A DNA stretch of 64,000 nucleotides from the NCBI RefSeq assembly GCF_032062105.1, contig NW_026930709.1, positions 248,001 to 312,000 of the forward strand, given 5' to 3'. Below the pieces are notes generated by a model. That model was not told the DNA's origin, ran no database searches, and saw only the letters and a list, made by a program, of their open reading frames with translations. The position numbers and the translations under genes are program-made. Below, piece by piece: positions 2,819-52,467 of the stretch (its first letter is position 1; every line of letters begins with the position of its first letter). The stretch comes from Saccostrea cucullata (Eukaryota).

Positions 2819-5800
2819 TTAACAGCTGTAATCACCATATAGTATACTTCTCGCAGGATTGATCTGAACAACGCCAAAATATGAGGCTTCTGTGTTCGTA
2901 TAGATGAACGTTGGGTCTCCAATTGGCCTTATCATAATATAGTCATCACATTCAAGTTTAAACATCCCCATATGATTCATTGTGTCAAATGGATGCTCGC
3001 CCTCTCTTCTATCGTAATATGCCTGACCTCTGTATTACAAAACAATTAAAGCAAAGTGGATTAATGATATAATAATCATATTTTTTTTTAAGAATTGTCT
3101 ATGTTTTTTTCAACAGGGCATTGACCTCGGTACATTATGTGCTTCTTATCTGAAATCTGTGTCAGACAACAGGTCAGGTTTATTTACTTGTTACATAATG
3201 TTGGTAAATATACATTGTTAGGAATTACAAACCTATTATCCTGCGTTATGTAACTTTTTATCAAGGTCTTTTCAGTTCCATTATGAACCAAAACTGTTTC
3301 AAATCCTACAGATGGCTCGTACCTGTACATTAAAACATACAAACAATATTTAATAAACGCAAAATTATGTAGACAAATTTTGAAGCAGGCTTATTCAGAG
3401 AACTTAGTTACATTTATTGAAAACTTCTAGTTTTAAGATGAAATCTTTCTGAGGAAATTTCTATATTTATAAATGGCTGTTTGTTAATATTAAGAAAAAT
3501 AATCCCGTAAGTTAAATCAGCAAATGAAATAAAATCGAGGGGAAAAGACTAAAATTCTCTTTTATATTTACTTAAGATTGAAATAGATGCAAGCAGGAAA
3601 TTTCTGTAAACAAGACATATTTGAGATGACTAGAATTTGTTATGAATTGAAACTGCTTTGCAAAAAGAACACTAGCGTATCTTAAAGCAGACACATATTT
3701 GTAAAAATATAATAAATAATTGAATCGAGTTGATATTCTTAATGTTTCTTCCTTACTGTCTTTAAGGTTGTGTGATGGATTGAAAATCCAAATTACACTA
3801 TGCTATGATTACACAAACAGTTGAAAACCTTGTTTATTCTCCCTGGTTTTCTATTAATCAATGACCACAAATATGTACATAATTTTTTTTATTCTAAATT
3901 TAATGAGTTTGAATATTTGTGTTTGTTAAATTGTTTCCAAGAAAAAAAATAATCCCATCAACCATGAGTAATGGTTTACACAAATTATGCATTTATCACT
4001 TGAAACTACAAGTGTAGTTGAATCACTTCAAGTGGCCCTCTTCTGTGAAGTATGTGAAAAATTGTTCATTTGAAGCTGTTACTTTATTTTTAGATAAAGT
4101 AAACAAATAATCATATTATCTTATAGCAACTTATCTAAGTACCAAGATAGTAATGGATAGTAGCAACCTTAATTATATCTACCCTTGCTCTGGACCGTTG
4201 ACTGCTACTTGAGCATATACTAAATATATTCCTGGACTGCGAACTTTGATAGCTACGGGCATACTATAGGCGTTATCTCTGATGTAGTCAAAAGTGGAGG
4301 AATATATAGACTCCGGATCACTCCATCTAAAGCAGTGTTTCCTGTTGAAGCACCCATCTAAAAAATAAAGCTTGTTAGTATTGATGACAAACCGACAACT
4401 CTCTTGCATGTATAAGTACATGTGTATATATCAAGTACTTAAAAGCTTCCATATGGGAAATTTTCTCTTAACATATCGGAGAGGTCTTCATTTTCATGGC
4501 ATTTTTTGAAATTGAAATCATCTAAAGAAAAATTGCATCTTTTTGAAAAAGAAATTAAAAGTATAAGCAATTAAATTGAATCATACCAATGTTGTTGACG
4601 GGAGATTTCAGGGTATCTTGAGTCATGGACGCAGACATTGTTAAGTGGACGACCTTTTTCATTATTCCATCTTCAAGAAAATTGCTAAACTATTATGATT
4701 TTAAACTAAATTTAAAACCAAAATCCTTATAATTCTAATGCATCACTTTATAGCAACGAATTTAAGAAAATAACACATGAAATGTGAATTGAATATCAAA
4801 AGGTTTACCCTCCAAGTTTCGAATTTTAGTATTCTCCAATCTTCCTGGAAAAAAGAAAGAAATAATTTATTTTAGACACAAACCACTGTTGAAATTCTAC
4901 TACCGGTATTTTAAACAGAGGCAAGCTTCTCACACATCAGTTGATGTTGCAGGGATTTCAACAACCTCGTTCAAAGTCAATATTTGGAAATTCAATGGTG
5001 GTTATAATGACTTTCATAATAAATTTAACCTATCTCTGGTACTTCTTTTGGTTGGCTCGTTTTATATCACTTGTAAGGCCTTTTTTGTAATAATATTGAC
5101 TACGGCAAGTGCTATCTACTTGATCAATACGTAGAAATCACGGGGGATGCCTACTCCTCTCCGGCAACTGATCCCACCTCCGGATTTCTCAGGGGTTCCT
5201 ATTCATGCCCTGATCGCCTATTTGTATTGTTTGAATTGTTAAAGGTTTTTATGTGATACCTACCTTTCAATACTAATTTTGATTGAATTTTTATAATCAA
5301 GAAATATAAAAGGAACATTTCATACTCAGATTTCTTTTTATTTCAGCTAAGTCTGCCCGCACTTCAGTTCTCCAACGACCTGAAATTATACAATAAAATT
5401 AAGGAACTGTCTACAAAATGTAAAGGAAGACGGAACCTAATTACAAAAGGACGGACTATTTAAAAAAAACTGATATTAAAGCAGTTTATTTAAACTTATC
5501 ATATTTTTTTCTGAAATCTTTGTTTACATTATAGTAAATTACAAATTATCAAATATTGAAAACTGAAGATTGAACCTGTATATCTAAACCCCATTGAATT
5601 CTTAATGTCTTGTGAAACATCTTTGAAGAAGTATCCCCATGGGTATCGTATTTTTCATGTTCTATATGAAGCCGCATGATGGAACATATAGAAGTTAACA
5701 TTTCCTAAAGAAAATAGAACCTTGTCTTCATGTATCTCCTTGTTTCTAAAATGTTTTGCAGTCCAAAAAAAGTTGTAATGCTAGTTTTTTTTTCTTTCGA

Positions 5801-7590
5801 TACCTATTTTACGATCACTGTTAGCATTGTTTCGACGAATATGGTACATGTAAGCTAAAAAATGGAACTTCTATTGTCCATATTCGGATATGATAAAGAA
5901 ATGTTTGAAATGTTGAACCGCATGTACTGAATTTTGACAATGAGCCTCAGAACTATCATATTACTCATATAAAGTAATTACCATTTCTTTTCTCTCTTCT
6001 GTATACAGGATTTCTCTGCAAGAAGAACAATTCTGTTAAGGTAGGATTCTTCTCTGGTTTCTGACTAGATGAAACATTCAAAGTATATTTGCTTATATGT
6101 CTTATATATTTAGGTGCAAGGGATTTACAAGACCACATTTTTCTCTCCTCATTTGAATTGTACAACTTTAAATAGAAATGGTAAACTGCGCTTGAAAACT
6201 AGCAGGGACTATATTTTTGGCAGAATGGTGGCGTATGAAAATATCTTCTTTTCTGCCTCTCAAAATTATTACAGAACAATGAATTTAGTTATAATTTTTA
6301 TACAATCAAAGACTTCAAGAAATTTTCAAATGTAAGTTGAATCAATAATAAGGGACTAAACTTTCAAAATATATCAAATAAATATGATTTTTCAAACAAA
6401 CTAGAATTATGTTGGCTTTTAAACGCTTCCAATCAAAGTACAGATATGAACCATTAATCCATGAAAAGTATTTTTTCTCTCTTAGTAAACGGTCAAAACT
6501 TTGTTTTTGTATCATTTTGTATATTTAAAAGACTACTTTATTGTATGTGAAAATAAGAAAAAGTTAAATATAGGAAGCATCTGAAAGTAACTTATATATC
6601 CTTAAAAATTAAGAAAACAGAGAAAATTCGGATTAGCCAATATCCAGTTTAGTTAAATTATTTATGAAAATTTGGTAATATCATGCTACAGACCCGATAT
6701 AGTAATATCTTTTTATGCAAAAAGAACAATCTTTAAACTTTTGAAAGAGAAGTAGACATCATATGATTGGCAACAGTATTTTTTTTATTCTTAATGGCAA
6801 GGAAAAAGATAATGACCTTGACCTGACCTTGCCTCTTATATGAAACGGTCAAATTTATTTTCACTGATACTATGACTGACTAATATTGTCTTCTTGATTC
6901 TGTGAAAATTTCATTAACTTTTAAATACAAGAAAGATGAGAAGAATCCTACCTTAATCATTGACATTACTTCCTCGCAATCTTAGCAACAACCACACAGA
7001 AGTCTCAACAACACATAGTGTTTATTTCATTTTTTAATAGATAAATTAATGATAATATCATAATAATGGGGATCTTTGAAAATAATGCAAGCAAGCTGAA
7101 TGTTATAATAATGAAAAAGGGTTAAAACTACGAAATAGTGATAAATCTCAATACATATACCGGTATATGAACAAAGCAACAAACATCCTCAAGAATTCCA
7201 GAATACAAATGAACATTTACAAGTATCTCTGCCATCTTTTTCTTTCATTTGACAGTTTCTTGAATCCCCAAGAAGCGTAATACTTACGTTGATTTCAGAT
7301 GGTTTCTTCTGCCCATATAAGATATAGTTAGATTCAAATAAAGGCTTTTGTGCCAAATTTGCATGAGATTCATCAGAAATTTGCAGTCGTTGCAGTGTTT
7401 TTTCCAATTCATTTGTTTGAATAATCAAATAAGTTACAGCTACTGACAGGAAAACAACCGCAGCTCCAAGTACTTTGATGCATGTTGATAGGTATTTCTC
7501 ATGGCTGCAATTTGCACCGTGTTCAGATTTTTCCTGAATCGGCAGACACAAACACGTGCTTTCCGATTTCGGTAAACAATTGCACTCCAT
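2819..7590 (-). CDS. TNF-superfamily ligand TNF-A (type II membrane protein, ~328 aa, 8 coding exons)
   Basis: Exons (minus): 7288-7590, 5982-6015, 5326-5379, 4809-4844, 4587-4670, 4183-4357, 3233-3322, 2819-3029. All GT-AG, phases 0,1,1,1,1,2,2, 987 nt open. TM segment VLGAAVVFLSVAVTYLII, coiled stalk, furin-type REKR. THD motifs KKVVHLT, IKVRSPGIYLVYAQV, GMFKLECDD, SYFGVVQI. Confidence 0.9.
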
Positions 7591-7598
7591 TTAGAATT

Positions 7599-7720
7599 GG
7601 GATTTTCCCATTTTCAGCCTACATCAAAGTTTTGGTTTCGCTCAGCGTTATATGAAGTATGCTATTTTACCCACTTTGAAATTGTGGTAATTCTTAGGCC
7701 CGCCCTCATGTCCCGCCTCT
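7599..7720 (-). promoter_or_regulatory. Putative TNF-A proximal module: NF-kappaB site plus paired GC boxes
   Basis: GGGATTTTCC(C) at 7599-7609 fits the kappaB consensus GGGRNWYYCC, just upstream of the ATG. ggcccgccctcatgtcccgcctct at 7697-7720. A homologous arrangement lies upstream of TNF-B. Confidence 0.6.
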
Positions 7721-9134
7721 TTTGTTAAAATCTGTTCTACATGTAAATTCCCTCTTCTTATAAGGTCGTTTCAAATGAATGGTTATTTGTAAATATTTTT
7801 TCGGCAGTTGTCTATAAATATACTTGAAGATTTAAATATACATGTACCCTTGAACTCAGCACATAAACCTGCAATATCTCGGCGAATTCTGTAAAGATTT
7901 ATCAATATATAACCTCGATACTTCTTTGCCTGAATTCTTTACGTCTCACTTAGAAATATACCGTTTAATTGGAATGCCCCTGGTAGTCGGTGCCAGAAGC
8001 TGAATTCCTTTTAAAGAAAGATACTACCAAATTCAAATACTAATTCAACTAAAAAAGATTGGCTATTCCGAATTCCTCTCTCTATTTTTTTTAAAAGGGA
8101 ATATTATACATTTAATGCATGATAGTGAGGGAAATATGAAGACTTATTCAGCCAAGAAAAATCATATTCCCCGAGGGCTTCGCCCGAGGCGAATATGATA
8201 TTTCTTGGCTGAATAAGTCTTCATGTTTCCCGAAAATTCATGCAATGAATTGTTTATTATACCGAAACAAGCAAAACCTTTTAAGTACGGGTCTCTGTAA
8301 GAATCAGACAATATGTGTATAAAAGTGAATCACGAGGGTTCTCAGAATTGGATGATTTTACACACATAGGTTTCTCTTACACTATGAACCACTTATGTAA
8401 AATGAAAATTATTTTGGGTACTGGTTACTATGGAAACATGGTCAAAGAAATTTTCCCTAGCAACCGATCAATTTTCAATGTGGATGGGCAAATATATCAC
8501 TAAACTTAGAGGCTTGAAATTGAATGTGAATATTACCAGAGGGGTTCTTAAATAATGTTATCATAAAGATAAACATTTCAAGTGATAAAACCATGTAATA
8601 CATAGAATTTTTATTTTAAGATATTTCTTTTACGGGCAATGGAAGATATGCATGTTTTGCATTTTTTGCTGATTCAGCATTTTTGTTAATTTGGGCAATT
8701 TTCAAGGCCATATATCTCAAACTTCTGGCACAATACAAAAGTATGGTATATTTTACATAAAGGCAGAGGAATATCCTTTTTGGAATTTAAATTCAAAAAC
8801 GTGTGTTTTTTAATATTTACAATCGGTTGCCTAGCAACAAAAATGGATGTTTTGATTAAGAGAAAGAGACAATTTGTCAAATATGCGAGTTATTTACGGA
8901 ATTAAATCTTATCGATGGATAACAAAATCAATTTTTAAAGTAAAAACATATTTCTGAGACTTCTTTATGAATTCAGGAATATTTTGCAAATACTAATCGC
9001 CATAGCAACAGAAAATTCCCCATAGTAACAAAGAAAATAAATCAACTTTTGACACGAACTCATATATGTTTGTAAAGATTATTCAGTGTTTGACAGACCA
9101 CAGTGATTTAAGAGCCTCAGTACATTTTTTGTAC

Positions 9135-9960
9135 TTTATTAGTCACCAACCGGTGAAACTGGAAGGCTATAGGTTTCCTCTGAGTCTGTCCGTCGGACTA
9201 GCTGTCCCCGTGTCTGTGTGTAAGTCTGTCCTACTTGGGTTTCCGCACTTATTTTCTGAACGCTTGAAGATATTGAGCTGAATTTCGGCATGTGAGTGTA
9301 TCTTGGTGAGTTACAGATTAAGTTTGAATTTCGTTACGCTTCATTGATTTTTGACAGATTTATGGCGTTTTATTTTTTTTCATAATTGTTTAAGATCGGG
9401 TTCGTGCTGCGCTAAATTCCAAAGGTCAACATGGTAAACCAATCGTAACTTCTCGGGCCTTTCCGACTAGCGGAAAAACAACCTCGAATGTATTAACATC
9501 ACCGGATGTTAAAAATTTATACATTTCCCGTTTATTCAAATACAGGCTAGACGGATTTAGAAGTTCCTTCTATAGTATATTTTAGGTGATATCATTACAT
9601 TTAATAAAGTAAAGCTCCATATTCCACAGATAAAAGTTCTCAATGCATTTATTTCAAAGATCGTGAAAAAGGAGGGTTGTCATGGCGTCTACCATATACA
9701 TTCGAGGTTGTTTTTCCGACCTCTGACGGAAAGACCCGAGATGATGCGATTGCATGGTAAACATGAAGCCAAAAGATGTTGAAAAAATAAGTTGAATTTC
9801 CGTTATGTGTTTTATTTCTTTTTTAGATTAAAGTCATGCATAACCTCAAAATTTTAACATCATGGTCATAACTTTTGCATATTATAAAATGACATTCTAG
9901 AGAAAAGGGGGAACCCGGTAGGGGACATGTATTGTTATGCAATAATCTCAGAATGCTTGT
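9135..9960 (+). mobile_element. HINE/Helentron-type (Pearl/DINE-1-like) non-autonomous element
   Basis: 5' TTTATTAGTCACCAACCGG with 3' subterminal inverted partner CCGGTAGGGGAC, a GTCT/GTCC microsatellite, a core unit (gaagatattgagctgaatttcggcatg), and a 3' short hairpin ending CTTGT. Confidence 0.7.
9440..9752. mobile_element. MITE with 10-bp TSD (Mutator-like), nested in the HINE
   Basis: ~55-bp imperfect TIRs (caatcg...cggaaaaacaacctcgaatgtat). Perfect direct repeat catggtaaac at 9430-9439 and 9753-9762. Confidence 0.85.
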
Positions 9961-10321
9961 AAGGTAAACCCATGGCAATAACATTGAGCATGTAGCTATC
10001 ATGAAAAGTTATTAAAGCTCCATATCATCTATAATGACCTGAACATTTATATAGGAGCTGTACATGTGGTATGTAGTGTCTCTGAATTTCTTAAAACTCC
10101 TTTAAAGTCTCTGACATTGTTACTAAAAGTTATGCAAAAAATTGGTTGTTATGTGTCATTGTTACCATGGCAACATGTCATAAATTTTGAAAAAAATATG
10201 GCATATTTTAACATGATAAGAGTGTTATAGTTAACATTTGTACCTAAACAAACAAGTGGCAGGGTTCCAGGCCATAAAAGTTAGACGAGTTATCATTCGA
10301 TGTCAGTCTCACAGTTACATG

Positions 10322-10987
10322 TAGCTGCAGATCTGCAGATTGGACCGAATTATCTTTGAAACCAAAATGGCAGTATAAATAAGCGAAATGTCCGATGATT
10401 GCAATATCAGGGCCAGGAGGATTATTAACAACAATTATGAGGAATATTTAATTTGTTGTGGAAAGAGTCAAAGAATATGTTAGAAACACATGGTTAGTAA
10501 TATTTTGAGATTACAGCTTTAAAAACATGGAGAAATAAATCGAGAACCGAGCGCATTATTTTGTGCGCAATAAATATACAGTTTTTTCAATGGGTGGCTC
10601 TGTAGCTCTCCGGTCTATCAATAATTTTTTTTCGGAGAGCTACAGATCTGCAGCTATCTCTACAACTGATAAACTCACTTGACTGAAATTCTTTGTTAGA
10701 TTGCTAAAAATTCACTTCAAGCGAGTTTATTGCCTGTAGAGACAACTATAAATGGTTGGGAGGTAGATAATATATATATATATATATATATACATTGGCT
10801 ACAGAATGTGTCTAGAAGAAGGGAATGAAAGGTATTTGATTAACCAATGCTAGAAAAAGGAGAAATTCTCCCCAAAAGCGCGCAAGAAATATTGCGCCGT
10901 AAATTGCACCTTTTTCGCATTACGGGATCTGTGGCGTTATGGTCAAAGACAAGTATATAAAACCATAACGCTACAGATCTGCAGCTA
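10322..10987. mobile_element. TAGCTGCAGATCTG-ended MITE (composite copy), 9-bp TSD
   Basis: Termini tagctgcagatctg / cagatctgcagcta; TSD agttacatg / aattacatg. Extra internal terminus at ~10656. About 300 bp shared with 15728-16017. Confidence 0.75.
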
Positions 10988-12819
10988 AATTACATGTAAA
11001 GGTTGAAATACATGTACAACAAAATATTAGAGAAAAGAGACTTGAAACATTTTCCAGGGACGAAACCACAACAAGCCTTCAACTGTAAAATATGCATGTT
11101 TTTATTTCATCCTAAATTTAAAAAAAAAATCACATTTCTATATAACTCACTCAGATGATCAATATAAAGACATTGTTTTGGTCATAATTAATATAGATTT
11201 TCACATTTCAAAATTTTCAAACTTTATTCTTCCAAAAATAGCAGTGCTAGGGAATTAAGCAGAAAAGAATATGCATCAATTAAATTTGAATCAAAAGGCC
11301 CAGGGACCACATCCCTCACCTGAGCACCGTAGCTGGGATCAAAGCAAAAATCAGTTTAGCCTTGGAAAGATTAAATGTATTTGTGGTCCCAACTACCCCT
11401 AAAAGGGAGGGGGTATTATGTCTTATTTCTTAAGTGATACATGTATCCAATATAACTTAAGTTCTTCCATGCAGAAAAGTATTATTTAAGGTGAGTCAAA
11501 TAACACGTTTCTTGATTAAAGCTGAACACTACTCGTAAAAGGGCATAGTCCGCCATATTTCCTGTTCTTCAAAGCTCTTCCTACAACCCATATATAAGGA
11601 GCAGATTGCTTATCACTTCAATGTATTTTGCTGTAAAGATCCGATGAGTGTAGACGTACATCTCACATAGCCGTGCTACTCGGTCGTGATGAAATTATTA
11701 AAGTTAACGTACTTTTTCCAAAACAGGACAAAAGTATTATGCAAAATACAGGTCGATACATCATTTACAAACAGAAAATGCACATAAAAACAAGGAATAA
11801 ACGCAAAAAATCTAAAACCACACAAGGAGTACTACATGTCGGCCACGCATTTCGAGTGCGCAATCGGGTGTAACAAAATCATGTCACATGTCACAAATGC
11901 AGGTCCAGGGCCGGTGTGCCGGTTACCCCCCCCCCCCCTCCGTTTGAAGATTTTGTACATGTACAGTAGTGTATATAAAATTTATATGTCCACTATCCTA
12001 AAACAAGGAGAAAACATCTTTCATTTGTGGACCCCCACTAATGCCTTGCCCTAAACCCACTGGAGACTTCAGTGCAGCCCAGGACCCCCTGCCTTCTACT
12101 GCCCCAACCCCTTCCCAAACTCACCCAACCACAAAATTCCTTGATCGACTTTCTTGAATTTTCCTGTTTTTTTTTTCTCAAGATAGGAGCATTTGCCAAA
12201 TTTCAGTAAAGTAAACACTCAGACAGCTAATGAAACATGCAAATTTATGCTGAAGTCAGAAAATCTAGTGGGTACTGGTATTTTAAATAGTGCATGAAGT
12301 AGAAATCAGATTTTGCAAATATAAAAAAAAAACATTTTTTTTTCATAAAATTCAAACATTTGAAAATGAATTTATTCTTTGAAAATTAAGGTACATTGAT
12401 GAAATTAGGCATTCTATTTATTTCATCTGTTTAGTTCAGTTTATTGAAGTCAAGAGACATATATCTCACAATTATACATGTTTAATAACAAATATAACAT
12501 GTATAATAATGAGTTTAACATGCAACATGTATAGTACATATTATATTTTCTATAATGTATAAACAAATGAAAGGCGCTGTTCTTGCTGCACTCGCTAGTT
12601 GCACAAATTTTCCTAGATTACATAATTCTTTTTTATTCTGTGTAATAATGACTAAGTAACTGTACTAATTTGAGGGCATTTGGTCTTCGGGAGTTTAGCA
12701 CATATGTACATTGTGTTACAGTTTCTACTGAACATGTACAATTAACTTTGCTAAGCCTAGCCAATGAAATTCATTTTTAATATTTGTTATACAATTTTTA
12801 GTGTATTGATGTATACGTA

Positions 12820-13888
12820 CAGGGTGTTTCACAATATATGTCACACATCTAAAGACAGATAGATAAATAACAACAAAAGCTACATACACATTTTATATAT
12901 CATTTTAATCGGCATATATTCAAAATTATTTTTTTAGTCAGAAGTATCCAAAATCCACCACCTCAGTTACTATGGCAACAAATCCTAAAATGTTATTCTC
13001 GAAGTGTTTTCCCAACATTGTCCTAAATAACTTAAGAGACTAATGTTTATAAATTTCTGATCACTGTTTTGTAAGTTTCCCAAGATTTCTGAGACTTTTC
13101 TTGTTTTATATCTGGCTTTTTAGAACCCCCAAAGTGCATATCTATTTTTATTTAAAGTTGCATTTAAATAAATGTTTCGTTTCAGAACTACCGGTATGTG
13201 TTAATTGGTGCCCACTTCTTTCACTCTTCCTTTCAGTCAATCTTGCAAACTTTTACCCCGGTTCTGAATGTCATTTGACTTTAAACGTTGAACTCTTGTA
13301 TGCAGACATACTTAACTCAAATTTAAGATTTCGAAATACTCTTGATACACTTACTGGCATTGTTACAACCCATCTTCCTAAACTCAGATGTGACTTTCAT
13401 GAGGTTTTCTCAATGATTGACTTCACTCTGATATTGTTCTCATCTCTTCTTGAATTTTTGGGGGTGGGGTAGGGTGGGGTGAAGAGGAGGCAAGTTTAAC
13501 TGTCTTTCATCTTTACATTATAATATAATTTAAACCCTCTAATTATTCTTAATAGAAGAAAAGTAAACAGTAATTTCTGGTCTAGTTATTTTTTATCATC
13601 ACCCCCTGTAAAATACCGGTATATAAAATATCGTAAACGGTTCTTATAATAAAAAATTACAACAAAATTTTGCTGCAAGTTTTACGCAATTTTGAGAATA
13701 ACTGAAATTATGACATCACTGATTATATCATCAGTTACTTCCTGGTTTATTATAATTTTCCCGATATTTTGCAACATAATAATTTTAGATCAATATGCTT
13801 AACTATCGTGTTTTGGTATTTTTGGTATCATGTTCGATATTCAGATTATGCCCATTTAGATGTGTGACATATATTGTGAAACACCCTG
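12820..13888 (-). mobile_element. Internally deleted Tc1/mariner element
   Basis: Perfect 34-bp TIRs CAGGGTGTTTCACAATATATGTCACACATCTAAA with TA TSD. Frameshifted minus-strand remnant (ENNIRVKSIIEK...AYK/RVQRLKSNDIQNR) resembles a mariner-type transposase N-terminal region. Confidence 0.85.
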
Positions 13889-14042
13889 TATATACCTATT
13901 GAATACATCAAAACAACCCTCTTTTTAAATAACACTATATCATTGTAAGTTACAAAAAACAGTTTGATTAATCTTTTGAAATAAATGCTTTTCAAGTTTA
14001 AAACACACACACACACAAAATTACAGAGAATTTGTACACTTC

Positions 14043-40804: not shown

Positions 40805-43800
40805 CTACGAAAGAAAAACAACCCCAAAGAACGTCTTGTCTGGGCTAATTGTTACAGCCGTTTCTCTGGTAATCACTTTAATCTGAACTGTGTCCCCCTT
40901 CTTTAAATAATGCAAGCCCATCATATTGCACGTCTTCTCCTTTGCATTGAAGAAATCCGATATTTCATTTGGTTCATATTTGTCAATACTGTCGGCACAG
41001 TGAAAGATTCTTTTGTCCGAAACAAAAATTCCGAAGAATTCTCTAGGATCCTTTGTAAATTTCTCTATCTACCAAAAGAAACAAATTTTCTTTAAATCAA
41101 TTCAACTTAATGCATGGTATCGATGCAGAAAAACTAATATAAGCTTAATTTTTTCCAGTCATTTATTCTCTAAAAAGGATTATGAAAACAGTTGTCTTTC
41201 AATCGCATTTCACTTTCACAGAAAATTAAATTACACTGGTTTTCAATCTTCTTCTGTTGTATTAAAATTTGATTATCCTAATGACCATTCCTCAAAAGGC
41301 CCGATAGGAAAGAACATGAGAATACTTGCAAATTTTGTAGAATATATTTCAATAAGATAAATTCTTGGTTTGAAAATTAACAATCTGAATTTGCATAAAC
41401 ATTATTAATATTATAGTAATGTTTCAAGTGAAACAATACACATAAAAATTCATTTTAAAATATGCACACATATATATTTTGGAAAAAAACCCGTTTATAT
41501 AAAATAACTTTTAAAGATATATTTTCTTCATATATCCTTATACAAAATTAGGTTTCCATTCCACTTTTTAAAAATGGAGGTTATGCCATAATTTGGGTCT
41601 TTCAACAATCAGTTGAAATGTCTATGGGTACCCGTTATTAGTAGAATATTTTTGTATTCAAGCAAAATTTATCCAAAAACTTCATGAAAAAAAGTTCCTT
41701 GCTTTGGTCTTCAATTCAACATTTGAATATACCGATGACGTTTTATTAAGTGTCAATAATCATTTTCATTCTTACTTTGATTTGATACATGTCTTTGATT
41801 GATTGATTGATTGTATGTTGTTTAACGTCCTTTTGACATTTCTTAAAAGGAAGTAAAAGATACCACAGAGTTAGACATATATTTTTTTTATTTGAATATT
41901 TCACACAAAAAGACATTGATAGTAACCCAACAACAAAACTTTCAGATAAACACGATTAGTTCAACTTTTCTTTTGTCAGCTTGTCTTAATATTTATGTAA
42001 CAATATATGCCATTATCAACTAAGGTGGACTCTATGCCTTTCAGTTGATGTGTATACTCCTCGTACGAACGAACTCTAAAACGACGCAAGCTACTAAGCA
42101 TTGACAAATACGTTGACAAAACAAGGATCTCAACAGTCTCGTTTAAAGTCATCAGACTCATCAACATTATATGGTGGATACAATGCCCTTGTTAACAAAG
42201 GCAATCTATTATTAACGCGAATGTTGAATCATTTTTAAATAAAAAGTCGTTAGGCCATTGTTTTCGCACTGATTTACATTTGCCCTGGCCAGTCACGACA
42301 AGGAGCACCTGCCAGGACTGACCAATCGAGAGGAAATGCTTACTCCTCCATGGTACCTGACCCTATCCCTGATGGTTTAGAGGTCTTGGTTTGTTATGTT
42401 CCAAACTTGTATTGTTCCAATGAACTTTTGAGCTTAATTAATTACTATTCAATATCTACAAGTTTCATCAGTCTAGATTGTTTTAAATGAAAGCTGTCCA
42501 TTAAGATAAATACGTGGTATTTAATGCACCAGGTTTAAACTGATACTTTGTTGGAACAAACCTGTATTCTTTGTAGCTAATGGGCTTTTACGAAGAGCGC
42601 TGACTTTTACAGTTGACGGCATACTTTTACACTAGGAAAATGCACAGAAGCTCTTTTACGATATAACATTAGCTCAACATTCAAATAAACGAGAATAACG
42701 GATTATTTCAATGCAAATATAAGTTGTCCATGATTTAGCTCAACATTCAAATAAACGAGAATAACGGATTATTTCAATGCACATATAAGTTGTCCATGAA
42801 AAAAACGACAACCAACCTACCCTCAACTCACGGCCTTCACATGCAAGTGCCCCTAACACTCTATGATCATTAACAAGGTTTTCTTATGTGTTATCAATTC
42901 TGTACCTCCGTACATGATACAAGTTTAAATGTCCAAGTATGCCGTCAACTGTAGAAGTCATTGCTTCTCGTAAAAGTCCACTAATACTTAATATTAAATC
43001 ATATATATGGATAAAAATACATGGAGTTCAGAAGATATTTGACAACATTATAATTTAACGAACATACTGCCAGAATGGGTGGACTTTTTCAAACAACAGG
43101 GAATAGTTTAATTTCGCTTTAATAAGGTACCATACACATACCAATAGTTTAGTTTATGTTACAAAAAATAACTTTAATAAGATACCATACACAGTTACCT
43201 GAGCATATAAAAGATATAGTCCTGATTGTAGCACTTCAAATGATTCGTGTCTATCCGTATTAAGTCTCATTATGGTGTTTTGGTACTCATTTTTCATCCA
43301 GACAGCTTCTTGAAAATATGGAATAGCTTTGTATTTCTCTGTAAATGTGAAATTTAAGATAATGAATTTTATAAGAATCAACTTATTATATTGCAGTTTG
43401 TTCAAAAACTTTGATAATTATATTTTTTAATTTGATTCTTGTTCAAGAATTTCCATATATCAAAATAATGATCAAAGAAACTTACACAGAATGAATATTA
43501 ACCATGGTACAACTCTGAGATGAAATTGATATGTTTTCTTTTTTCCTAATGTTGATACTAGGGAATTATCTTAAAATACGTCAGATACAAACATAATTAT
43601 TGCGTATTTATTCATAAAGCGTGAAAAACCAGAAGTCTCTGTCGAGACTGAAGCTCTACTGGTTTGTACTTATAGCAAAGGAAGAGAAAAGTTCTTAAGA
43701 AGTTGGGAATTGAAACTTTACCACAGCAATAAAAAGAATAATGATCCTTGATTAAGTCTCTTTATGTTCTTAGTATAGTCTACTTGCATGCCACATTATA

Positions 43801-46800
43801 TTAAAATCAGATCAAAATTGTAGGAGGAGTAGCATTTTGAGATTTTTTAACAGAAATTTCTATTTTTAGTTACCATGGCAACACCGTTAATCGAAATCAA
43901 AAACCAATATACAGAATTACGTATCTTAGTGTAGTCTACTTGTGTGCCAAGTTATATTGAAATCAGACCAAAACTGTAGGAGGAGTAGCATTTTGAAAGA
44001 ATTTCACAGAAATTTCTATTTTTAGTAACAAGGCAACACCGTTCATCGAAATCAAAAACTGATAAACAGAATTATGTATCTTAGTGTAGTCTACTTGTAT
44101 GCTAAGTTATATTGAAATCAGACCAAAACTGTAGGAGAAGTAGCATTTTGAAAGAATTTCATAGAAATTTCTATTTTTAGTAACAACGGCAACACCGTTA
44201 ATCGAAATCAAAAACCGATAAACAGAATTATGTATCTTATTGTAGTCTACTTGTGTGCCAAGTTATATTGAAATCAGACCAAAACTGTAGGAGGAGTAGC
44301 ATTTTGAAAGAATTTCACAGAAATTTCTATTTTTAGCAACACGGCAACACCGTTCATCGAAATCAAAAATTGATATACAGAATTAAGTATCTTAATGTAG
44401 TCTACTTGTGTGCTAAGTTATATTAAAATCAGACCAAAAATGTAGAAGGAGTAGTATTTTGAAAGAATTTCACAGAAATTTCTATTTTTAGTAACCACGG
44501 CAACACCGTTCATCGAAATCAAAAACTGATACACAGAATTATGTATCTTAGTGTAGTCTACTTATGTGCCAAGTTATATTGAAATCAGACCAAAACTGTA
44601 GGAGAAGTAGCATTTTGAAAGAATTTCACAGAAATTTCTATTTTTAGTAACAACGGCAACACCGTTAATCAAAATCAAAAACCGATACACAGAATTATGT
44701 ATCTTAGTGTAGTTTACTTGTGTGCCAAATTATATTCAAATCAGACCAAAACTGTAGGAGGAGTAGCATTTTGAAAGATTGTTTACAGACAGACAGACAG
44801 ACGGACAGACAGATGGACGGACGACGGACGCATTACTATCGCATAAGCTCTTCTGGTCTCTGACCAGTAGAGCTAAAAAATTACCTCGACTCCAAAATGT
44901 TCTGTTTGAAGGGCAATAGAAGTCTTCTTTACTTAGTACACAATCTACAATGTTACAAATTGACAAAAAGGTAAATGTAGCTCTAAACATTGCTTAAAAT
45001 AGTAGAGGTAAGATCAAATAAAAAGTTAAGGAATGAAACTTTAACCTTGCGGAGGAAGAGATGATTTCCACTTTAGAAGTTTTTAATTTCAGATGCAAAC
45101 TACTTGACTGGATAATTATATAGAAACCACGGTGATTAATTGTAGTTGAATTATATCCACCTCTCGCGGTTTTGCTTCAGTCATCGTGCTTTTACATGGC
45201 AGACAATCTAAACCAATCTCCGTATGTGGCATACTTACCTTTTACATTCGGTGGACTGGTAATAAAATGGGCTGCTTGAAATTTTCCCTAAAAACAGAAA
45301 AATCGAAATTCTTATAAAATATTTCTTTTAGAACATGTTTTAGTGAACAGGGCCACATGATGAGACACCTATTAGTAACATTAGTAATACTGCTTCATAC
45401 AGGTTGGGAAAAAATCAAACAGACCTCCAAACCATCAGAGATAGGATTATGTTCCATAAACGTTTAGTACGAACACGGATATAGCGAATTCACCGATATA
45501 ACGAAGTTTTTCTGGGTCCCCGTCAAAATTCTTAACAAATCTTTTTAAAATTTTACGGTTATAACGAACTCTGATATAACGAATTTACGGATATAGCGAA
45601 CTGATTTTAGTCCCGTTGAGGTTAAATATAATGAATTCTACATCTTTTATAACGAACTTTCAAAGATTTCAAAATTTGAATAATGGAACTGACTTTATTT
45701 TCTCTCAGCATTTGTATATAAAATTCAATTCATAATAAAACCTTAGTTATCGAAGGTATGTTTTGTAATATTTGCTTCCCCAACATATTTGATAGTAACA
45801 CTTGAAGGAAAACATTCATATTGCGAATTCGCTATATATGGTTATACGAATTCGTTATACGGATATAACGAATTACGGATATAGCTAATTAAATTCACAG
45901 GTCCCCAGGACTTCGCTATAATCGTGTTTTACTGTATTATTTAGAAAGAATTTATAAGAAATAACTGCCATTTCATTCAAGCTTATAAAATTCAAACATG
46001 CATTTTTTTCTCTTAGTTTCTGCATTTACGTTATAGTCGCTTACTCAAATAAAATCTGTATATATATACTGAGTTTGTATACTAAAATTGAAATTAACTT
46101 ACAGGGGGGCCTTGTATGCCAGGAATTCCTGAAAAAGAGTGAAACGTGAACAACTGAAAATGTGAAAAATGTTTACTATAGCTAGACTGCAGTGATTTAT
46201 AGATAATTATGTTCTTTTGAGTTAAAGTACAAGTTAATCACTTGCGTTTAAAGTTTCCGAGTAAAAAATGTTCTAATGGGAGTTTAACAACAAATTTAAT
46301 TTTTAATTTTAAAAATAGAAATGCAGTTTACTTTTTTGTAATATTATAGAAAAACATGCTTATAACGAAGCGCCGGTAATGGGCGATTTTACTACGTCAT
46401 ACATGTATATGTAATTCGTTGTCATCATATTCTTTATATGTTTAAAACCCACGAAGAATGAAAATTTCTTCGCTATAAGCGTGAAACCATTATAATCGTG
46501 TTCCACTATAAGCGTGATTTAATATACTTTCAACTTGCCTTTTTCTCCTCGGGGACCCGGAGCCCCTGGTGGACATTTACATCTTCTGCGTTTTCTGATT
46601 TTGCTTCTTCTACGTTTGTTCTTTCGGTTTTTCTCTTTAAAAAAAAATACAGGAATCTTATTCGCATATTTTACTTTTATGACAAGAACAAGAGTATTTT
46701 AAGTTCCATAACTCTTCCATATCTCTTTCCAACACTACGCCTTTACATTTTCCCTGTCTCTTGTAAGTTTCTTAAAAATTCCAAAGCTTACAATAACTAA

Positions 46801-47416
46801 ACTTTATTCGTATTAAATTTTCTTTTTTGCTTATCGCTTTATACTTATAAAAAGTAAAATTCTACTTAGAAACTAAGTTGTCAACCCTGATACAAAACCT
46901 ACTAGGTTTGGGTGGTTTAGTTGAAGTGTCGACGCTCCGTTCGATTCTTTTCACTTCTTCTGATACACTAACAGTGTGCATCACGGATACAACTGATTCT
47001 ATGGAGTCCTAAAATTTAAAAAATTCTATAATTTTATTTTGACAAATTGACGTTATTGATCAAACATAGATCTAAATCTGAATTGAGAAATCATAAGAAT
47101 TTCCAAAATGCAACGTACAATGAATGTCAGAAACAGCTTAGTAAAATTCTAGAAAAGCAATTAAATTTGAAATATATTTTTAAATTAATTTATTCCAAGT
47201 AGATAACAACTTACTTACTTTTTCATTGTCTTTATATTCAGGAAATGACATGGATGCTACAATTTTGGAGAGTTCCCTTACTTCACTCTTCAACGCTGAC
47301 ATTTGGTAGGCAGACCAAATGCAGTAAAGAAATGCAGCAACAAGCAACACGTTCTTCGCAACGGAAGATGCAGATAAAGAAAAATTTATATCTACTTTCC
47401 TTTTCGGTTCAGACAT
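40805..47416 (-). CDS. Ectodysplasin-like TNF-superfamily ligand TNF-D with short collagen domain (~312 aa, 8 coding exons)
   Basis: Exons (minus): 47219-47416, 46903-47008, 46539-46634 (GC donor), 46103-46128, 45239-45287, 44885-44944, 43199-43338, 40805-41068. Phases 0,1,1,0,1,1,0; 939 nt. TM NVLLVAAFLYCIWSAY; KKNRKNKRRRSKIRKRRR-CKC-PP-GAPGPRGEKGIPGIQGPP. THD motifs QAAHF, FEVLQSGLYLLYAQI, FHCAD...KTCNMMGLHYLKKGD, TFFGVVFL. Confidence 0.88.
41560..42460 (+). mobile_element. Degraded Penelope-like reverse transcriptase remnant in the last TNF-D intron
   Basis: Frameshifted RT motifs (QQSVEMSMGT, resembling GIPMGT; FEYTDDVL, resembling YIDD) followed by the Penelope-type 3' block. A SINE-tail fragment (gatt)n sits at ~41795-41830. 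Confidence 0.7.
42574..42987. mobile_element. MITE-like inverted-repeat element with internal 66-bp tandem duplication
   Basis: Inverted arms cttttacgaagagcgctgacttttacagttgacggcatactt / aagtatgccgtcaactgtagaagtcattgcttctcgtaaaag. Direct duplication 42669-42733 / 42735-42799. Confidence 0.7.
43627..44880 (-). mobile_element. HINE/Helentron-type element carrying a 156-bp satellite array (~6.4 units, 43765-44777)
   Basis: Minus 5' TTTTTAGCTCTACTGG with subterminal inverted partner ccagtagagct, (GTCC/GTCT)n microsatellite, units spaced 155-156 bp, 3' hairpin agtctcgacagagact. A decayed relative lies at ~55977-56320 in a Kelch intron. Confidence 0.85.
45465..45934. mobile_element. Pogo/Tigger-like MITE
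   Basis: Inverted ends acacggatatagcgaa / ttcgctataatcgtgttttactg|ta with internal tataacgaa repeats. Related piece at ~46345-46520. Confidence 0.65.
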
Positions 47417-48074
47417 TTTAAAACTGCAACAGTATTAAAAATTTGCAGTAAAAAGGTAACATTTCCAGGGTTATTTGATTCTGAGAGTTATTCCTTTGCA
47501 CATGTTTCTGACTGCGACAACTTCTATTTTTCCCGGGAAGAAGTCTAAAAGCGTTACTTCCTGTGCCGTAACAAGAAAGTTCAACAACCCAATTCGTGGA
47601 ATTCTAGCAGGTGCCCCTGTTGAGCATAATGCATATATATTTTACGCTACATTATTTTGCATATTTAAATGGGACAGGTATATTGAGTTCGTGTCAATTC
47701 TTCTTAAATTTAATGACAATTAACTGAATGGCCTTCAGTGCAATTTATCTGTGGCCGTGATAATAATATTTACATGTTTGATAAAAGAACAGGGATTATA
47801 GGAGCATGTGTTCAGTTTATTTTTTACATATCTCTACTACGTAAATACCGTATGACACGTGATACAATAGTGCATTTCAAACGAATTTTTGAAATTTGTC
47901 TTTTTTTCCCTACTAGGATCAAAACGTGATTCTGATTTTTACGACTTGTAAAGAATGATTTTTAATTGATAATTTCCATTTACATATCCGTATATATACT
48001 AGTATTTGAAACTGGGGACAGGGAATTTTTCACAATGTAGAGAAGAGAGTTAAAAATTTAAATGTTTAGGCTTT

Positions 48075-48212
48075 CATGGGACCTCATTTTATACCGTCTC
48101 GTCCGAAGAACCGGTCCCCACGTCTCAAAGTGGATTTGAACCCGCGACGTAAGAATAAATTCCTTATGTCGACTTTAGAGCAAACTCTCTAACACTACGC
48201 CATGCCATAGAC
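48075..48212 (-). mobile_element. Partial (5' half) copy of the same tRNA-derived SINE
   Basis: tggcgtagtg A box, gggttcaaatcc B box, ggttcttcggacgagacgg core; similar to 14043-14334. Confidence 0.7.
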
Positions 48213-48988
48213 TTAAAAAAAATGACCAGATTAAAATTTTCCTACCAGCAAATTTCTTCTAAATGGCATTATACGTTAGTAAAGTAAAAGGTGGAGATAA
48301 TGAACAGTGTTAGATCTCAAAAAAATCTATAAACAATACAACGTTAAGAGGGCATAACACACGAACCCGTAAATTCCAGAGGTGGGATCAGGTGCCTAGG
48401 AGGAGTTAACATCCCTGCTGACCGTCACACCTGCTGTGACCCCTATGTATTAATCAGGTAGACGGGAGATTTCGGAGTCAAATTCAGTATACAAACAAAG
48501 ACCTAACAATTAGTATAAAACAAGTCAACGAGAATAAGACTCCAAGTTATTAGGTCATATTTGATAACAAGGTCATTTACATATTGTTGACTTTAAATTC
48601 AAAGTGGGTATGTGAATTCCCTGTAACATCAACTTAAGAGGCATGTCTAGCTTTAAATACAATTTTCGTACCCAGAGCAAGCTCTTGAGTAGCGAATAAG
48701 TTAGAAGACAGAAACACCATAAGCAGGTGAGAGTGGGAAAATGCTACATTTATAAACAAACTTTACGATAGAAAAGCTGGTTATCTCGTTTGTCCTGTAA
48801 TTTAGTAGTTTTTTTTTAAATTAATTTTAGCCTTTTTAATTCCAAATTCTTTGAGATATACCAAGTCGACAAATACTCAGTAAATGAAAATATACTGTTA
48901 ATAGATAAATCATTAAAGAGATGTTAGATGTGATTCAATTTATTATTCAGACAAGTTTTTCAATGTCATTATATGTCTACATATTTTG

Positions 48989-51929
48989 TCACGTTTTGAG
49001 CAATATTGCCCCAAAGTTTGTATTTTCAGGCTTGAGTATGACTGCTGTATTTGCTGTAAGGAATCTGATGGAGAGCTGACTACCCTGTTGTAGAAAGAAA
49101 ACACCGGACACACTACAGGTTTTCCCTTTGGAGTACATAAAAGGATTAGAAGGATTTGATCTAACGTAGTCGAGGCTTTCCCGGCAGTCCAGCTTACGAT
49201 TGCTGTCAATGTAGATAGCTACGTCGTGTGATGATTTTGTGGCCTGGATCAAAACCTGGAGTATATTAATATACGACAAAAAAGTTTTATACTGTATCAA
49301 GTAAAGAATGAAGGTTTAAATTATGGATGATACAGTATCAGAACTATAGGATTAGAAGTTATGGAATGGAAAACAGATTGTAGGGGAAAGGTCAGAAAAT
49401 TTATGAAACACCTGCAAATACTTAACAAAATAACAGAAAAAGAAAGGAATCATCAGAAAATTGAACCTGAAAAGAAGTACATTAAAACAGTCAAACTACT
49501 ACTAGTTTGTGGACTGGAGTTTAGAAGGGCTAACCTTTATCTGTAGATATTGATAATGTAGTATGTACTGATATGATTCGTAATCCATATTCACTTTCTA
49601 TTTACTGATAAAGGTAAGTGTCAAAAGCATCAAGAGATAAAGATGGGCGTAGAAAACTATTTCAAGGCAATCCAGTAACACAGTGCCAATGATCTATTAT
49701 TTTAATTATCAACAATACCAAAAAAAAAAAATCTTATTTACAGTGTATGTTATTTGGCTTAGAAAATAAGTGGAATTGCAGAAGAAAATAAAGATATGCA
49801 ATGCATGGTTCGTTTTGCAAGACAATTGTTCATTGATAAGAATTAAATTAAAATAGAAAAACTCCCTTCTTATTACATGTTTTACAAGAAAATGATAAAT
49901 ATCTACCATTGTAACTGTTAATTAAATGAAAATATCCTGGTAACTTAAACACTGGGATATACAGACTTTCCAGCTGGTAAAGTGCTTTTAAAATCAACAT
50001 CAACAAAGAGAAAAAAAGTCATGGGAGCTGTCACAAATTATAACGATTGGAGGATACAGAAACTGGATGCACATTAATACAAGAAACATGTAAGCTTAGG
50101 TTGAATTACGTAAGTAAACTCCAAATGATTAGCAAAGGGATGAAAGAGAAACTGAAGTATAAATTAAAATGGAAAAGAATCTGAAAGTTTACATTGAAAT
50201 ATTAAACTTCTCCAAATTGGACTAAAAAAAATCTTGCATCTTGTGTCTACAGTGTAGAATACGAGATCGTTCAAAACAGCAAGTTTACAATGACATAAGA
50301 AGAAACTTGTAATCTACCAAAATGGTACCAGATAAACCGAAATCTTACATTGAGATACAAAAGATGAAGGCCAGATTTGGTCACTGTGAAGGAACTTGTG
50401 TCTGCTTGGCTTTGTGAAAGGGGTTCAACCTCCTCAATATGTTGTGACTTCATCCAAGATGAAGGTCTGAAAAATTTGACTCCGTGTAGAGGATCTACAA
50501 AGAGTTTGTGGATAGAGTATACTACAATATAGATTCTAGAATGTGGAAACAATTGGAGGCAAAGGAAATTATAATGTATTGCTACAGCAGAGACGTAATA
50601 AGCTTACCATTTATCATAAATGTTTGGTTTGCACAGAAAGTCCCCGACCAGACGTAGCAGCAGGAACCTGGAAAAAAAGAGCTTCCTATGATTAATACAT
50701 TAAAAAAATCAAAAAATAGGATGTAAATAACGGTATGGTTTATTAACTCTCGCTGCTCTTAAAGAAGTTATTTTGATAATTTAATTTGCTTTTGACTTGT
50801 TGTTACGTAATGTTTAATCTTCATTATGAGATGCTTTCATACTGAACCAACCTTTGCATTTTATTCCTTGTTTCTGATAAATGTCGTGATACTCGTGTGG
50901 CACATAATGAACTGCAGTTACTCCTGAATTGACCTAAGACAGAGACGAAACGAAAACATTAGTAATAAATTTTCATCATAATTTTGTTCGGATTGAATAT
51001 GATTATCAGTTCAAAATTATCAGAAGATGAGAACTTACATCACTGAGTAATTCCAGACCTGAAAGAATAAAAAAGAATTACAATTATGCGATATCATTTC
51101 GTTATTGAAAAAGCTCGTAAGTTGTTTTTTTAAATAAATACTTATTGAAAACCAACTTAATGCAAAATGGAAAAAATCGTACTTGGGCCTCCAGACAAAA
51201 ATCTTTTCATTCCTGTGTTTTCTGAAAAGCAAAAACAGACAAATTGCTCAACTCTTTGAAGTTTTTCTTGCTCAGTTACTTTTGTTGTAAATAATTACTT
51301 TCATTGTATTTCATATACTTATAATACTTGCATCTTTCTTATACCCATTTCAGTCGTGAAACTTTTTTAAAAAAGAAAATACTTGGAAGCCAATTCAATA
51401 TTTTAATTATTTACGTTCTCACGCAAACTATTTTATGCTATCCGACTAGAAGCGCAGTATATACTTAAGTCGTTATTGATAATTATATACTGAACTACTA
51501 CCTCTGGTCAGCATATTTGTTCTATAACTATCTCCAGCAACTTCGTCTTGCATTCTTTCAAGATCAATAACTGACTTTTGGTCTATACTCTACAACAGAA
51601 ATGTGTATTAAGAGACGGTGTGCTTTGATGCATATTACAAAAAAAGAAATTATTTGAAAAATTGTTTTTCAAAATATAGAACAGGAACAAACCGTGATAT
51701 TCCAGTTGAAAATTTTTGTTGAACTTAAGATTCTGCTCAGATTATTCACTTTTTCCACTACGTTTTGCACTTCGTTCATCATCTTTATATAAATGACAAG
51801 CAAACAACTGCAAACTCCAATGACCATCATAAAAAGTAATATAACAGCAATTTTAATTCCAGCTTTCTTTCGATACTTTTTAGACGTATATGCCATTTCA
51901 TTTAAGGAATAAACCTTGCAATTTGTCAT
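48989..51929 (-). CDS. TNF-superfamily ligand TNF-E (paralog of TNF-D without collagen, ~312 aa, 8 coding exons)
   Basis: Exons (minus): 51693-51929, 51502-51589, 51183-51221, 51039-51058, 50852-50933, 50608-50667, 50349-50494, 48989-49255. Phases 0,1,1,0,1,1,0; 939 nt. TM IAVILLFMMVIGVCSCLLVIYI. THD motifs TAVHY, FTVTKSGLHLLYLNV, LDCRE...KTCSVSGVFFLQQG, TNFGAILL. Confidence 0.87.
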
Positions 51930-52467
51930 ATTTACTCGTCACTATTGGAAAACGTTTTGGCTGTGTCAATATTATTACCCGATAGTGTAATCAAACAAAT
52001 ATAGGTACATATATGACATGTGTAAACTTAATATAGTAAAAAGTGCTCCGATTAACCTGAAATCAGCAGCCAACCACGGTATAAGGATGGGTGCGGAAGT
52101 TAGTTAATTTCTACAGGGGTTGTGCAATTCTTCAGTAGGTGGACTTGGTATAACCTGGTTAGGACAGTGGTGTTTCGGTATTGAATTCGATTACATCATG
52201 CGGTCCACTCCTCCTTATACTGAATCGCCCAAAAGTTCAAAAACTCAAATAAACGACCCGATTTACATTTACTAGTATTTCATAGAAAGTTTATAAATAC
52301 ATTTTTCAGGACTTTTCGATCTTAAAGTTCATCCTTCATTCATAAAGGTGGCAACTTTATTTTAGTATACGTTGGTCGTTCTTTTCGGACACTGACCGAC
52401 GTCGATAACACTATAAAAGTACTATGTAGTACTCTTATCAGACCGATTAAAACTTTCGAAAGGAGGA

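What the first reader, a model, noticed from the sequence alone, without database searches (positions are those of the whole stretch)
2819..51929. Tandem array of five deeply diverged TNF-superfamily ligands, mostly invisible to the ORF track
Five intact, co-oriented genes built from many 20-110-nt exons, each TM + stalk + THD. They differ in intron pattern, cysteine pattern, furin sites and collagen content. This looks like an old, locally diversified cytokine locus rather than recent copies, and it may pair with several distinct receptors. The ORFs and splice phases are seen in sequence; the functional diversity is inference. TNF expansions in oysters are known in general, but these architectures may be unannotated or mis-annotated.
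Basis: partly seen in the sequence, partly recalled or inferred. Interest (0 to 1): 0.85.

Follow-up and report, generated by a model that had tools for sequence, protein, structure and literature searches.

The report
Oyster TNF array with exon-swapping ligand
Five old cytokine (TNF-family) genes sit in a row in this oyster genome, and one of them can swap the part of its receptor-facing surface among four alternative exons, a splicing switch kept from oysters to mussels that could give one gene several differently aimed signals.

Summary
Confirmed: five intact minus-strand TNF-superfamily genes (A-E; 297-328 aa; membrane anchor, stalk, TNF domain) in Saccostrea cucullata. RNA contigs of a close relative support all seven junctions of E and the first four of D. 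The order E-D-C-B-A is kept in Magallana angulata and partly in Mytilus. The genes form three old lineages (A/B, C, D/E). Oyster TNF expansions are known and several of these genes are in RefSeq. Four oysters keep the same four exons; mussels have three plus the same 4-residue option. The swapped segment matches the main EDAR-binding patch of EDA-A1. A 19-nt intronic element, invariant in four oysters, can pair either upstream (skipping exon a) or downstream (skipping b-d). I found no paper on this. Different receptor choice and the RNA switch are inferred, not shown.

The parts
2819..7590 (-). Gene A, 328 aa; exons 7590-7288, 6015-5982, 5379-5326, 4844-4809, 4670-4587, 4357-4183, 3322-3233, 3029-2819; furin site REKR; lacks the E-F cysteine pair, has Cys173/179 and Cys286/328
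   Evidence: orthologues P0280 (S. echinata RefSeq) and P0023 (transcript contig); fold of orthologue; junctions not tested by reads
20185..24101 (-). Gene B, 311 aa; exons 24101-23853, 23581-23533, 22188-22117, 21743-21660, 21555-21384, 21244-21155, 20404-20185; sister of A, same THD introns and cysteines
   Evidence: orthologue P0115 47% over 312 aa, Pfam TNF 30.9 bits; junctions not tested by reads
27214..34090 (-). Gene C (RefSeq 'protein eiger-like'); constitutive exons 34090-33800, 32991-32851, 28029 or 28017 to 27881, 27489-27214; furin site RVKR; E-F cysteine pair
   Evidence: transcript contig L035
30658..30715 (-). Gene C alternative exon a (58 nt, phase 0 to 1): THD strand A plus AA'' loop
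   Evidence: RefSeq X2, X6; conserved in 4 oysters, counterpart in Mytilus
28814..28883 (-). Gene C alternative exon b (70 nt, phase 0 to 1)
   Evidence: RefSeq X1, X3; Logan protein P0157
28737..28785 (-). Gene C alternative exon c (49 nt, phase 0 to 1), only 28 nt after exon b
   Evidence: RefSeq X5, X8; spliced in transcript contig L035
28519..28573 (-). Gene C alternative exon d (55 nt, phase 0 to 1)
   Evidence: RefSeq X4, X7; forms strand A in the AlphaFold model
28018..28029 (-). 12 nt between two alternative acceptors: adds or removes 4 residues (ENLS) of the AA'' loop
   Evidence: same option in Ostrea, Crassostrea, Magallana and Mytilus
32764..32783 (-). U1: intronic element just after exon 2, complementary to Sa (pairing would loop out exon a)
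   Evidence: -31, -27, -29 kcal/mol in three oysters, weak in O. edulis
30574..30592 (-). Sa: 19-nt intronic element 65 nt after exon a, invariant in four oysters; shared partner of U1 and D
28100..28118 (-). D element: intronic element before the constitutive exon, complementary to Sa (pairing would loop out b, c, d)
   Evidence: 17-18 of 19 pairs, about -25 kcal/mol in all four oysters
40805..47416 (-). Gene D, 312 aa, ectodysplasin-like layout; exons 47416-47219, 47008-46903, 46634-46539, 46128-46103, 45287-45239, 44944-44885, 43338-43199, 41068-40805; polybasic stretch with RKRR, CxC, 7 Gly-X-Y triplets; GC-AG intron 46538-46129
   Evidence: RNA junctions 1-4; orthologue P0002 73%
48989..51929 (-). 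Gene E, 312 aa, sister of D without collagen and without an R-x-K/R-R site; exons 51929-51693, 51589-51502, 51221-51183, 51058-51039, 50933-50852, 50667-50608, 50494-50349, 49255-48989
   Evidence: all 7 junctions in RNA run X2; orthologue P0004 87%

Best explanation
An ancient bivalve cluster of five type II membrane TNF-superfamily ligands of the Eiger/EDA/BAFF type. Each is made as a membrane trimer; A-D are probably shed by furin, E probably stays anchored (inferred from family knowledge). They differ mainly in the AA'' region that follows strand A: a disulfide loop in A/B, an extra 60-nt Cys-bearing exon in D/E, and in C a choice of one of four duplicated exons plus an optional 4 residues, giving eight THDs from one gene (shown at the level of gene models and partly transcripts). 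One exon at a time is enforced by three things: all four are phase 0 to 1, so double use or skipping gives a premature stop (shown by computation); b and c are 28 nt apart, too close to be joined (inferred); and element Sa pairs either with U1 (exon a skipped) or with D (b-d skipped) (complementarity shown, function inferred). Because this segment is the main receptor-contact patch in EDA-A1, the isoforms most likely differ in receptor affinity or choice (inferred, about 50%).
For: Gene models and phases; RNA junctions; eight combinations equal RefSeq X1-X8; same four exons, same order and 28-29 nt b-c gap in M. angulata and O. edulis; three exons plus the 4-residue option in four Mytilus species; pooled pN/pS 0.36 and low pS 0.27 against 0.4-0.8 in constitutive exons; exon d supplies strand A in the model, best match EDA-A1 Z 19.4, rmsd 1.8, model residue 10 on EDA 247; EDA Gln256, Ser258, Ala259, Gln261, Asp265 form the main EDAR patch (PMC9918506); U1 and D are the two best partners of Sa in three oysters, D in all four; 22 TNFR cysteine-rich matches in the genome.
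Against: No receptor data. In Eiger-Grindelwald the key ligand residues are Asp337, His388/Arg391 and Arg396/Arg401, outside this segment (PMC8024323). The AA'' loop is low-confidence in the model (pLDDT about 53). A Magallana transcript joins a to d, so exclusion leaks. Sa-D shows no compensatory change, U1-Sa one; U1-Sa is weak in O. edulis; Mytilus lacks clear U1/D partners. No pairing explains b/c versus d. Shuffled Sa can reach -24 to -28 kcal/mol at best. Isoform sets rest largely on RefSeq predictions.
Confidence: 0.7

Rival explanations
1. The four exons are real and mutually exclusive, but they tune folding, trimer stability, shedding or tissue expression, not receptor choice; all isoforms bind the same single-CRD (Grindelwald-like) receptor.
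For: Strand A is in the inner sheet (A'AHCF; PMC8024323); Grindelwald contacts lie elsewhere; gene C is named eiger-like and matches Eiger well.
Against: Most of the variation is in the exposed loop, which differs in length (16-23 aa) and charge and is conserved per exon across genera; the best structural match binds its receptor through this segment.
Confidence: 0.3
2. Exclusivity comes only from frame shifts with nonsense-mediated decay and the 28-nt gap; the conserved intronic elements are protein-binding sites or do something else, and their complementarity is incidental.
For: Every double inclusion puts a stop 118-196 nt before the last junction; an a+d transcript exists; almost no covariation.
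Against: Sa is the only 19-nt stretch away from splice sites that is invariant in four species; its best partners are two separate conserved elements on either side, placed as in serpent (PMC4691838).
Confidence: 0.25
3. The array is an ordinary known oyster TNF expansion and the isoforms of C are annotation noise or decaying exon duplicates.
For: 23 TNFSF genes are reported for C. gigas (PMC12843592, PMC7674686); RefSeq isoforms are predictions; exon d has pN/pS about 1 against M. angulata (small counts).
Against: Open frames, phases, splice sites and order of a-d are kept in four genera and the design recurs in mussels; assembled transcripts carry b, c and d.
Confidence: 0.05

Closest known systems
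Ectodysplasin A (EDA-A1/EDA-A2)
   Same: Best structural match of C (Z 19.4); E-F cysteine pair in C, D, E; gene D has anchor, furin site, collagen and THD; splicing inside the THD, which in EDA switches the receptor from EDAR to XEDAR (PMC9918506).
   Different: EDA adds or drops two residues (Val307-Glu308); C replaces strand A and the AA'' loop wholesale from four duplicated exons and adds a 4-residue option. D has only 7 Gly-X-Y triplets. Orthology to EDA is not shown.
Arthropod Eiger
   Same: Multi-exon THD, E-F disulfide, sequence and fold match; RefSeq names C eiger-like.
   Different: Single gene in flies; its Grindelwald contacts lie outside the segment swapped in C.
Crassostrea gigas TNF expansion (23 genes; Gao et al. 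2015, cited in PMC12843592; paper itself not held)
   Same: Many TNFSF genes in an oyster; tandem arrangement is common in invertebrate TNFSF.
   Different: 15 other loci in this genome have a single-exon THD and mostly form a separate clade; this array is multi-exon and includes the mutually exclusive cluster, which I found described nowhere.
Mutually exclusive exons controlled by competing RNA pairings: Drosophila serpent and Dscam exon 4/9, human ATE1
   Same: Element after the upstream constitutive exon, element before the downstream constitutive exon, complementary sequence between the variants (PMC4691838); one element contested by two partners (ATE1 R3, PMC7797038).
   Different: Serpent uses two separate selectors, here one is shared; in ATE1 R4 lies before exon 7b, here D lies after the last variant; four exons with a steric b/c pair; mollusc cytokine gene; not tested experimentally.

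Membership tests
TNF superfamily ligands | Type II membrane anchor near the N-terminus | tested here: met
   Best 19-aa hydropathy windows 2.26, 2.56, 3.12, 1.58 (weak, D), 3.04 at residues 23-58
TNF superfamily ligands | C-terminal TNF homology domain (PF00229 above cut-off) | tested here: met
   C isoforms 44 bits; orthologues of A, B, D, E 26.6, 30.9, 34, 24.1 bits; window exons singly. Joined window models of A, B, D, E were not scanned.
TNF superfamily ligands | Jelly-roll fold | tested here: met
   C isoform d pLDDT 78, EDA-A1 Z 19.4; A orthologue pLDDT 77.5, BAFF/EDA Z about 16. B, D, E not folded; alignments held other THDs, which favours this fold.
TNF superfamily ligands | Trimer formation and binding to a TNF receptor | not testable with these tools
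   Only the presence of TNFR cysteine-rich domains in the genome was shown
Eiger/EDA/BAFF/APRIL/TWEAK type (genes C, D, E) | Cysteine pair linking strands E and F (PMC6684607) | tested here: met
   C 237/252, D 249/272, E 248/271
Eiger/EDA/BAFF/APRIL/TWEAK type (genes A, B) | Cysteine pair linking strands E and F | tested here: not met
   Absent in all A/B orthologues; other conserved cysteines instead
Ectodysplasin A (gene D) | Furin site, collagen repeat, THD in that order | tested here: met
   RKRR at 115, 7 Gly-X-Y from 125; weak Pfam Collagen hit in orthologue
Ectodysplasin A (gene D) | Orthology to vertebrate EDA and binding to EDAR | not tested
   No named vertebrate sequence was in the tree; D groups with E and unnamed proteins
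Mutually exclusive exon cluster (gene C) | Tandem homologous exons with the same phases, one per productive mRNA | tested here: met
   one leaky a+d contig is out of frame
Docking-site/selector RNA control | Conserved competing complementary intronic elements | tested here: met
   (U1-Sa weak in O. edulis; not found in Mytilus)
Docking-site/selector RNA control | Compensatory covariation or mutational rescue | tested here: inconclusive

The most novel reading that the evidence does not exclude
One bivalve TNF gene makes up to eight ligands with different receptor specificities by swapping strand A and the AA'' loop among duplicated exons, chosen by a shared-selector RNA switch; the design predates the oyster-mussel split. 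This would be a cytokine diversified by Dscam-style splicing, far beyond the two-residue EDA-A1/A2 switch.
Probability: 0.4. Interest if true: 0.8.

Novelty: new variant of a known kind. Interest (0 to 1): 0.62.

Why it matters
How invertebrate TNF ligands pair with their many receptors is open. Gene C offers eight natural variants that differ only in one receptor-facing segment on an identical scaffold, a direct test of what sets ligand-receptor specificity. Counts of mollusc TNF genes and expression studies that use one isoform would miss this layer. It also adds a mollusc case of competing RNA pairings to a mechanism known mainly from insects and ATE1. The array itself is an ordinary, if old, family expansion that is often mis-annotated.

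Tried and rejected
My first model of C used a 30-nt exon at 32298-32269 and an acceptor at 28047; no RefSeq isoform or orthologue has them, rejected. My first model of D lacked exon 44944-44885, found through the orthologue. A four-element model in which the conserved motif at 28688-28677 pairs with U1 or D was rejected: energies -4 to -12 kcal/mol, no better than background; local folding of 28560-28760 is not significant (z -0.11). The conserved element at 32126-32073 has no consistent partner. A whole-genome Pfam scan missed all five genes because the THD is split. The AU test rejects one clade of array genes (p 0.005), but unnamed D-like proteins left outside may be array orthologues, so it is not decisive; the careful tree did not finish. 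Look-ups of contigs for P0173, P0154, P0050 and P0224 were empty. Four literature searches for this splicing or for the locus identifiers found nothing relevant; Gao et al. 2015 is not held.
Full report
Source. The window is G000:C12846:248001-312000. Proteins identical to my models of gene C are RefSeq entries of Saccostrea cucullata on a 444,089-nt contig, the length of C12846, so the genome is that oyster. The window holds no N.

Observation. Reading the minus strand and checking by coordinates gives five open, co-oriented genes, A to E, with the exons listed under parts. All acceptors are AG and all donors GT except one GC donor in D. Each protein has an N-terminal hydrophobic segment, a stalk and a C-terminal THD. 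Single THD exons hit Pfam TNF in 8 of 10 cases; full-length C isoforms and orthologues of A, B, D and E pass the cut-off. RNA contigs from four studies of a close relative were laid on 46050-52000: run X2 shows all seven introns of E, including the 20-nt exon, and all four runs show introns 1-3 of D with a loose end that continues into exon 5. Joined models built from coordinates were used only inside scripts, for frame checks and local comparison with proteins already fetched.

Age and relations. Paralogues are 20-31% identical in the THD, except A and B at 44%. M. angulata has the same five genes in the same order within 28 kb; S. echinata has KLHL-E-D and C-B-A; O. edulis has C-B. Mytilus has an E-like gene, a further THD gene, a collagen-bearing gene, C, and a 308-aa membrane-anchored gene of untested identity in a row. 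Quick trees give three lineages, A/B on a very long branch, C, and D/E, apart from most of the single-exon THD genes of this genome; the base is unresolved. C, D and E keep the E-F cysteine pair typical of Eiger, EDA, BAFF, APRIL and TWEAK (PMC6684607); A and B lack it, carry other conserved cysteines and still model as a TNF jelly roll. D has a polybasic stretch, CxC and seven Gly-X-Y triplets; E has no R-x-K/R-R site.

The unusual part is gene C. Between exon 2 and the exon ending at 27881 lie four exons, a (58 nt), b (70), c (49) and d (55), all phase 0 to 1, and the next exon has two acceptors 12 nt apart. The eight combinations reproduce RefSeq isoforms X1-X8 letter for letter. O. edulis, C. 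virginica and M. angulata have the same eight classes; order and the 28-29 nt gap between b and c are kept in the two genomes mapped. Four Mytilus species show up to three such exons and the same 4-residue option; one is clearly the counterpart of a. The oyster-mussel split is Palaeozoic (own knowledge). Transcript evidence independent of RefSeq: contig L035 has exon 1, 2, c, long acceptor and last exon at 95-100% identity to the window; Logan proteins carry b-short, c-short and d-long. Contig L034 from Magallana joins a to d, out of frame, so exclusion is not absolute. The four exons have pooled pN/pS 0.36 and unusually few synonymous changes.

What the exons encode. All four align with strand A of the THD and the loop after it. 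In an AlphaFold model of isoform d the first strand, residues 13-18, comes from exon d, and the best structural match is EDA-A1 (Z 19.4, rmsd 1.8, 137 aligned, model 10-157 on EDA 247-388). Anchoring by eye on the His-x-x-Gly of strand A and the EDA sequence printed, the variable exon covers about EDA 245-263 and the optional four residues sit on Asn264-Ser267. In the EDA-A1/EDAR crystal, Gln256, Ser258, Ala259, Gln261 and Asp265 form the patch that gives most electrostatic contacts, and A259E and D265G impair signalling (PMC9918506). The AA'' loop is also implicated for RANKL (PMC8781899). Against this, Eiger binds Grindelwald through Asp337, His388/Arg391 and Arg396/Arg401 (PMC8024323). A change of receptor choice is therefore plausible, not shown, and depends on receptor type; the genome has at least 22 TNFR cysteine-rich matches.

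How one exon is chosen. Any two exons together put a stop 118-196 nt before the last junction, and skipping all four puts one 59 nt before it, which should trigger decay (established knowledge). The 28-nt gap is too short for b and c to be spliced together (inference). Sa, 65 nt after exon a, is the only 19-nt stretch away from splice sites that is invariant in four oysters. It is complementary to D before the constitutive exon (17-18 of 19 pairs, about -25 kcal/mol in all four) and to U1 after exon 2 (-27 to -31 in three, weak in O. edulis); these are its two best partners in 4-6 kb of intron, the next being -16 to -20. U1-Sa would loop out a; Sa-D would loop out b, c and d. This resembles serpent (PMC4691838) and ATE1 (PMC7797038), with one shared selector. 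Limits: shuffled Sa averages -18 to -20 but occasionally reaches -24 to -28 (15 shuffles each); covariation is one pair; nothing explains b/c versus d; in Mytilus the similar element pairs best with the end of the exon itself.

Novelty and score. Oyster TNF expansion is known (23 genes in C. gigas, PMC12843592), and the isoforms are in RefSeq as unexplained entries. Searches of the held literature found no description of mutually exclusive exons in a THD or of these loci; subscription papers, including Gao et al. 2015, were not searchable. Earlier notes of this scan cover A/B, D, E and a foldback element but not this cluster. The array alone would score about 0.35. The conserved four-way switch in C, with a testable RNA mechanism and a testable specificity question, raises it to 0.62: a new variant of a known kind.

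Noticed in passing
window 8321-9063 and 16754-17496: 743-nt inverted arms, 97% complementary, 7.7 kb apart, between genes A and B: a foldback-type element.
   Followed up: partly
G000:C19598:73132-74937 (L026): Partial copy of gene A (last three exons, 97-100% protein identity, 88% DNA over 1.86 kb); the 5' exons were not found before the contig end. Truncated duplicate or divergent haplotype.
   Followed up: partly
window 47416-48258 and 48688-48989: RNA contigs run unspliced at least 840 nt upstream of D's start codon and come within about 430 nt of E's 3' UTR, separated by a repeat; a long leader or E-D read-through is possible.
   Followed up: no
window 32073-32126: Intronic element conserved in three oyster genera, with two inverted CCAAT motifs and an ETS-like core; no RNA partner found; perhaps a DNA regulatory element.
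   Followed up: partly
window 28677-28688 and 28590-28606: 12-nt motif invariant between exons c and d, and a short conserved hairpin just before the acceptor of d; role unknown.
   Followed up: partly
window 34419-34506, 34703-34787, 37021-37152: Non-coding blocks upstream of gene C conserved in M. angulata (the last also in O. edulis): candidate 5' UTR exons or promoter elements.
   Followed up: no
window 43762-44778: 156-bp tandem repeat, 6.5 copies, in an intron of D next to the 60-nt exon.
   Followed up: no
window 57082-58128 (-) and 61488-63655 (+): BTB-BACK kelch-like gene and a DM10-domain (EFHC-type) gene, head to head; the kelch gene also flanks E in S. echinata.
   Followed up: partly
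L033 23799-23895 and L032 51761-51855: In two Mytilus species an Sa-like element pairs with the 3' end and donor of the first variant exon (-26 kcal/mol); M. californianus also has an optional 12-residue exon and an alternative donor.
   Followed up: partly
window 21244 and 21250: Two in-frame acceptors 6 nt apart at exon 6 of gene B; the one matching gene A in length was used.
   Followed up: no
P0004 (S. echinata RefSeq orthologue of E): 15 aa shorter in the stalk than the window model, whose 39-nt exon is supported by RNA run X2; possibly a skipped micro-exon or a model error.
   Followed up: no
L017:1124-2347: 408-codon open frame with NHL repeats about 8 kb left of the window.
   Followed up: no
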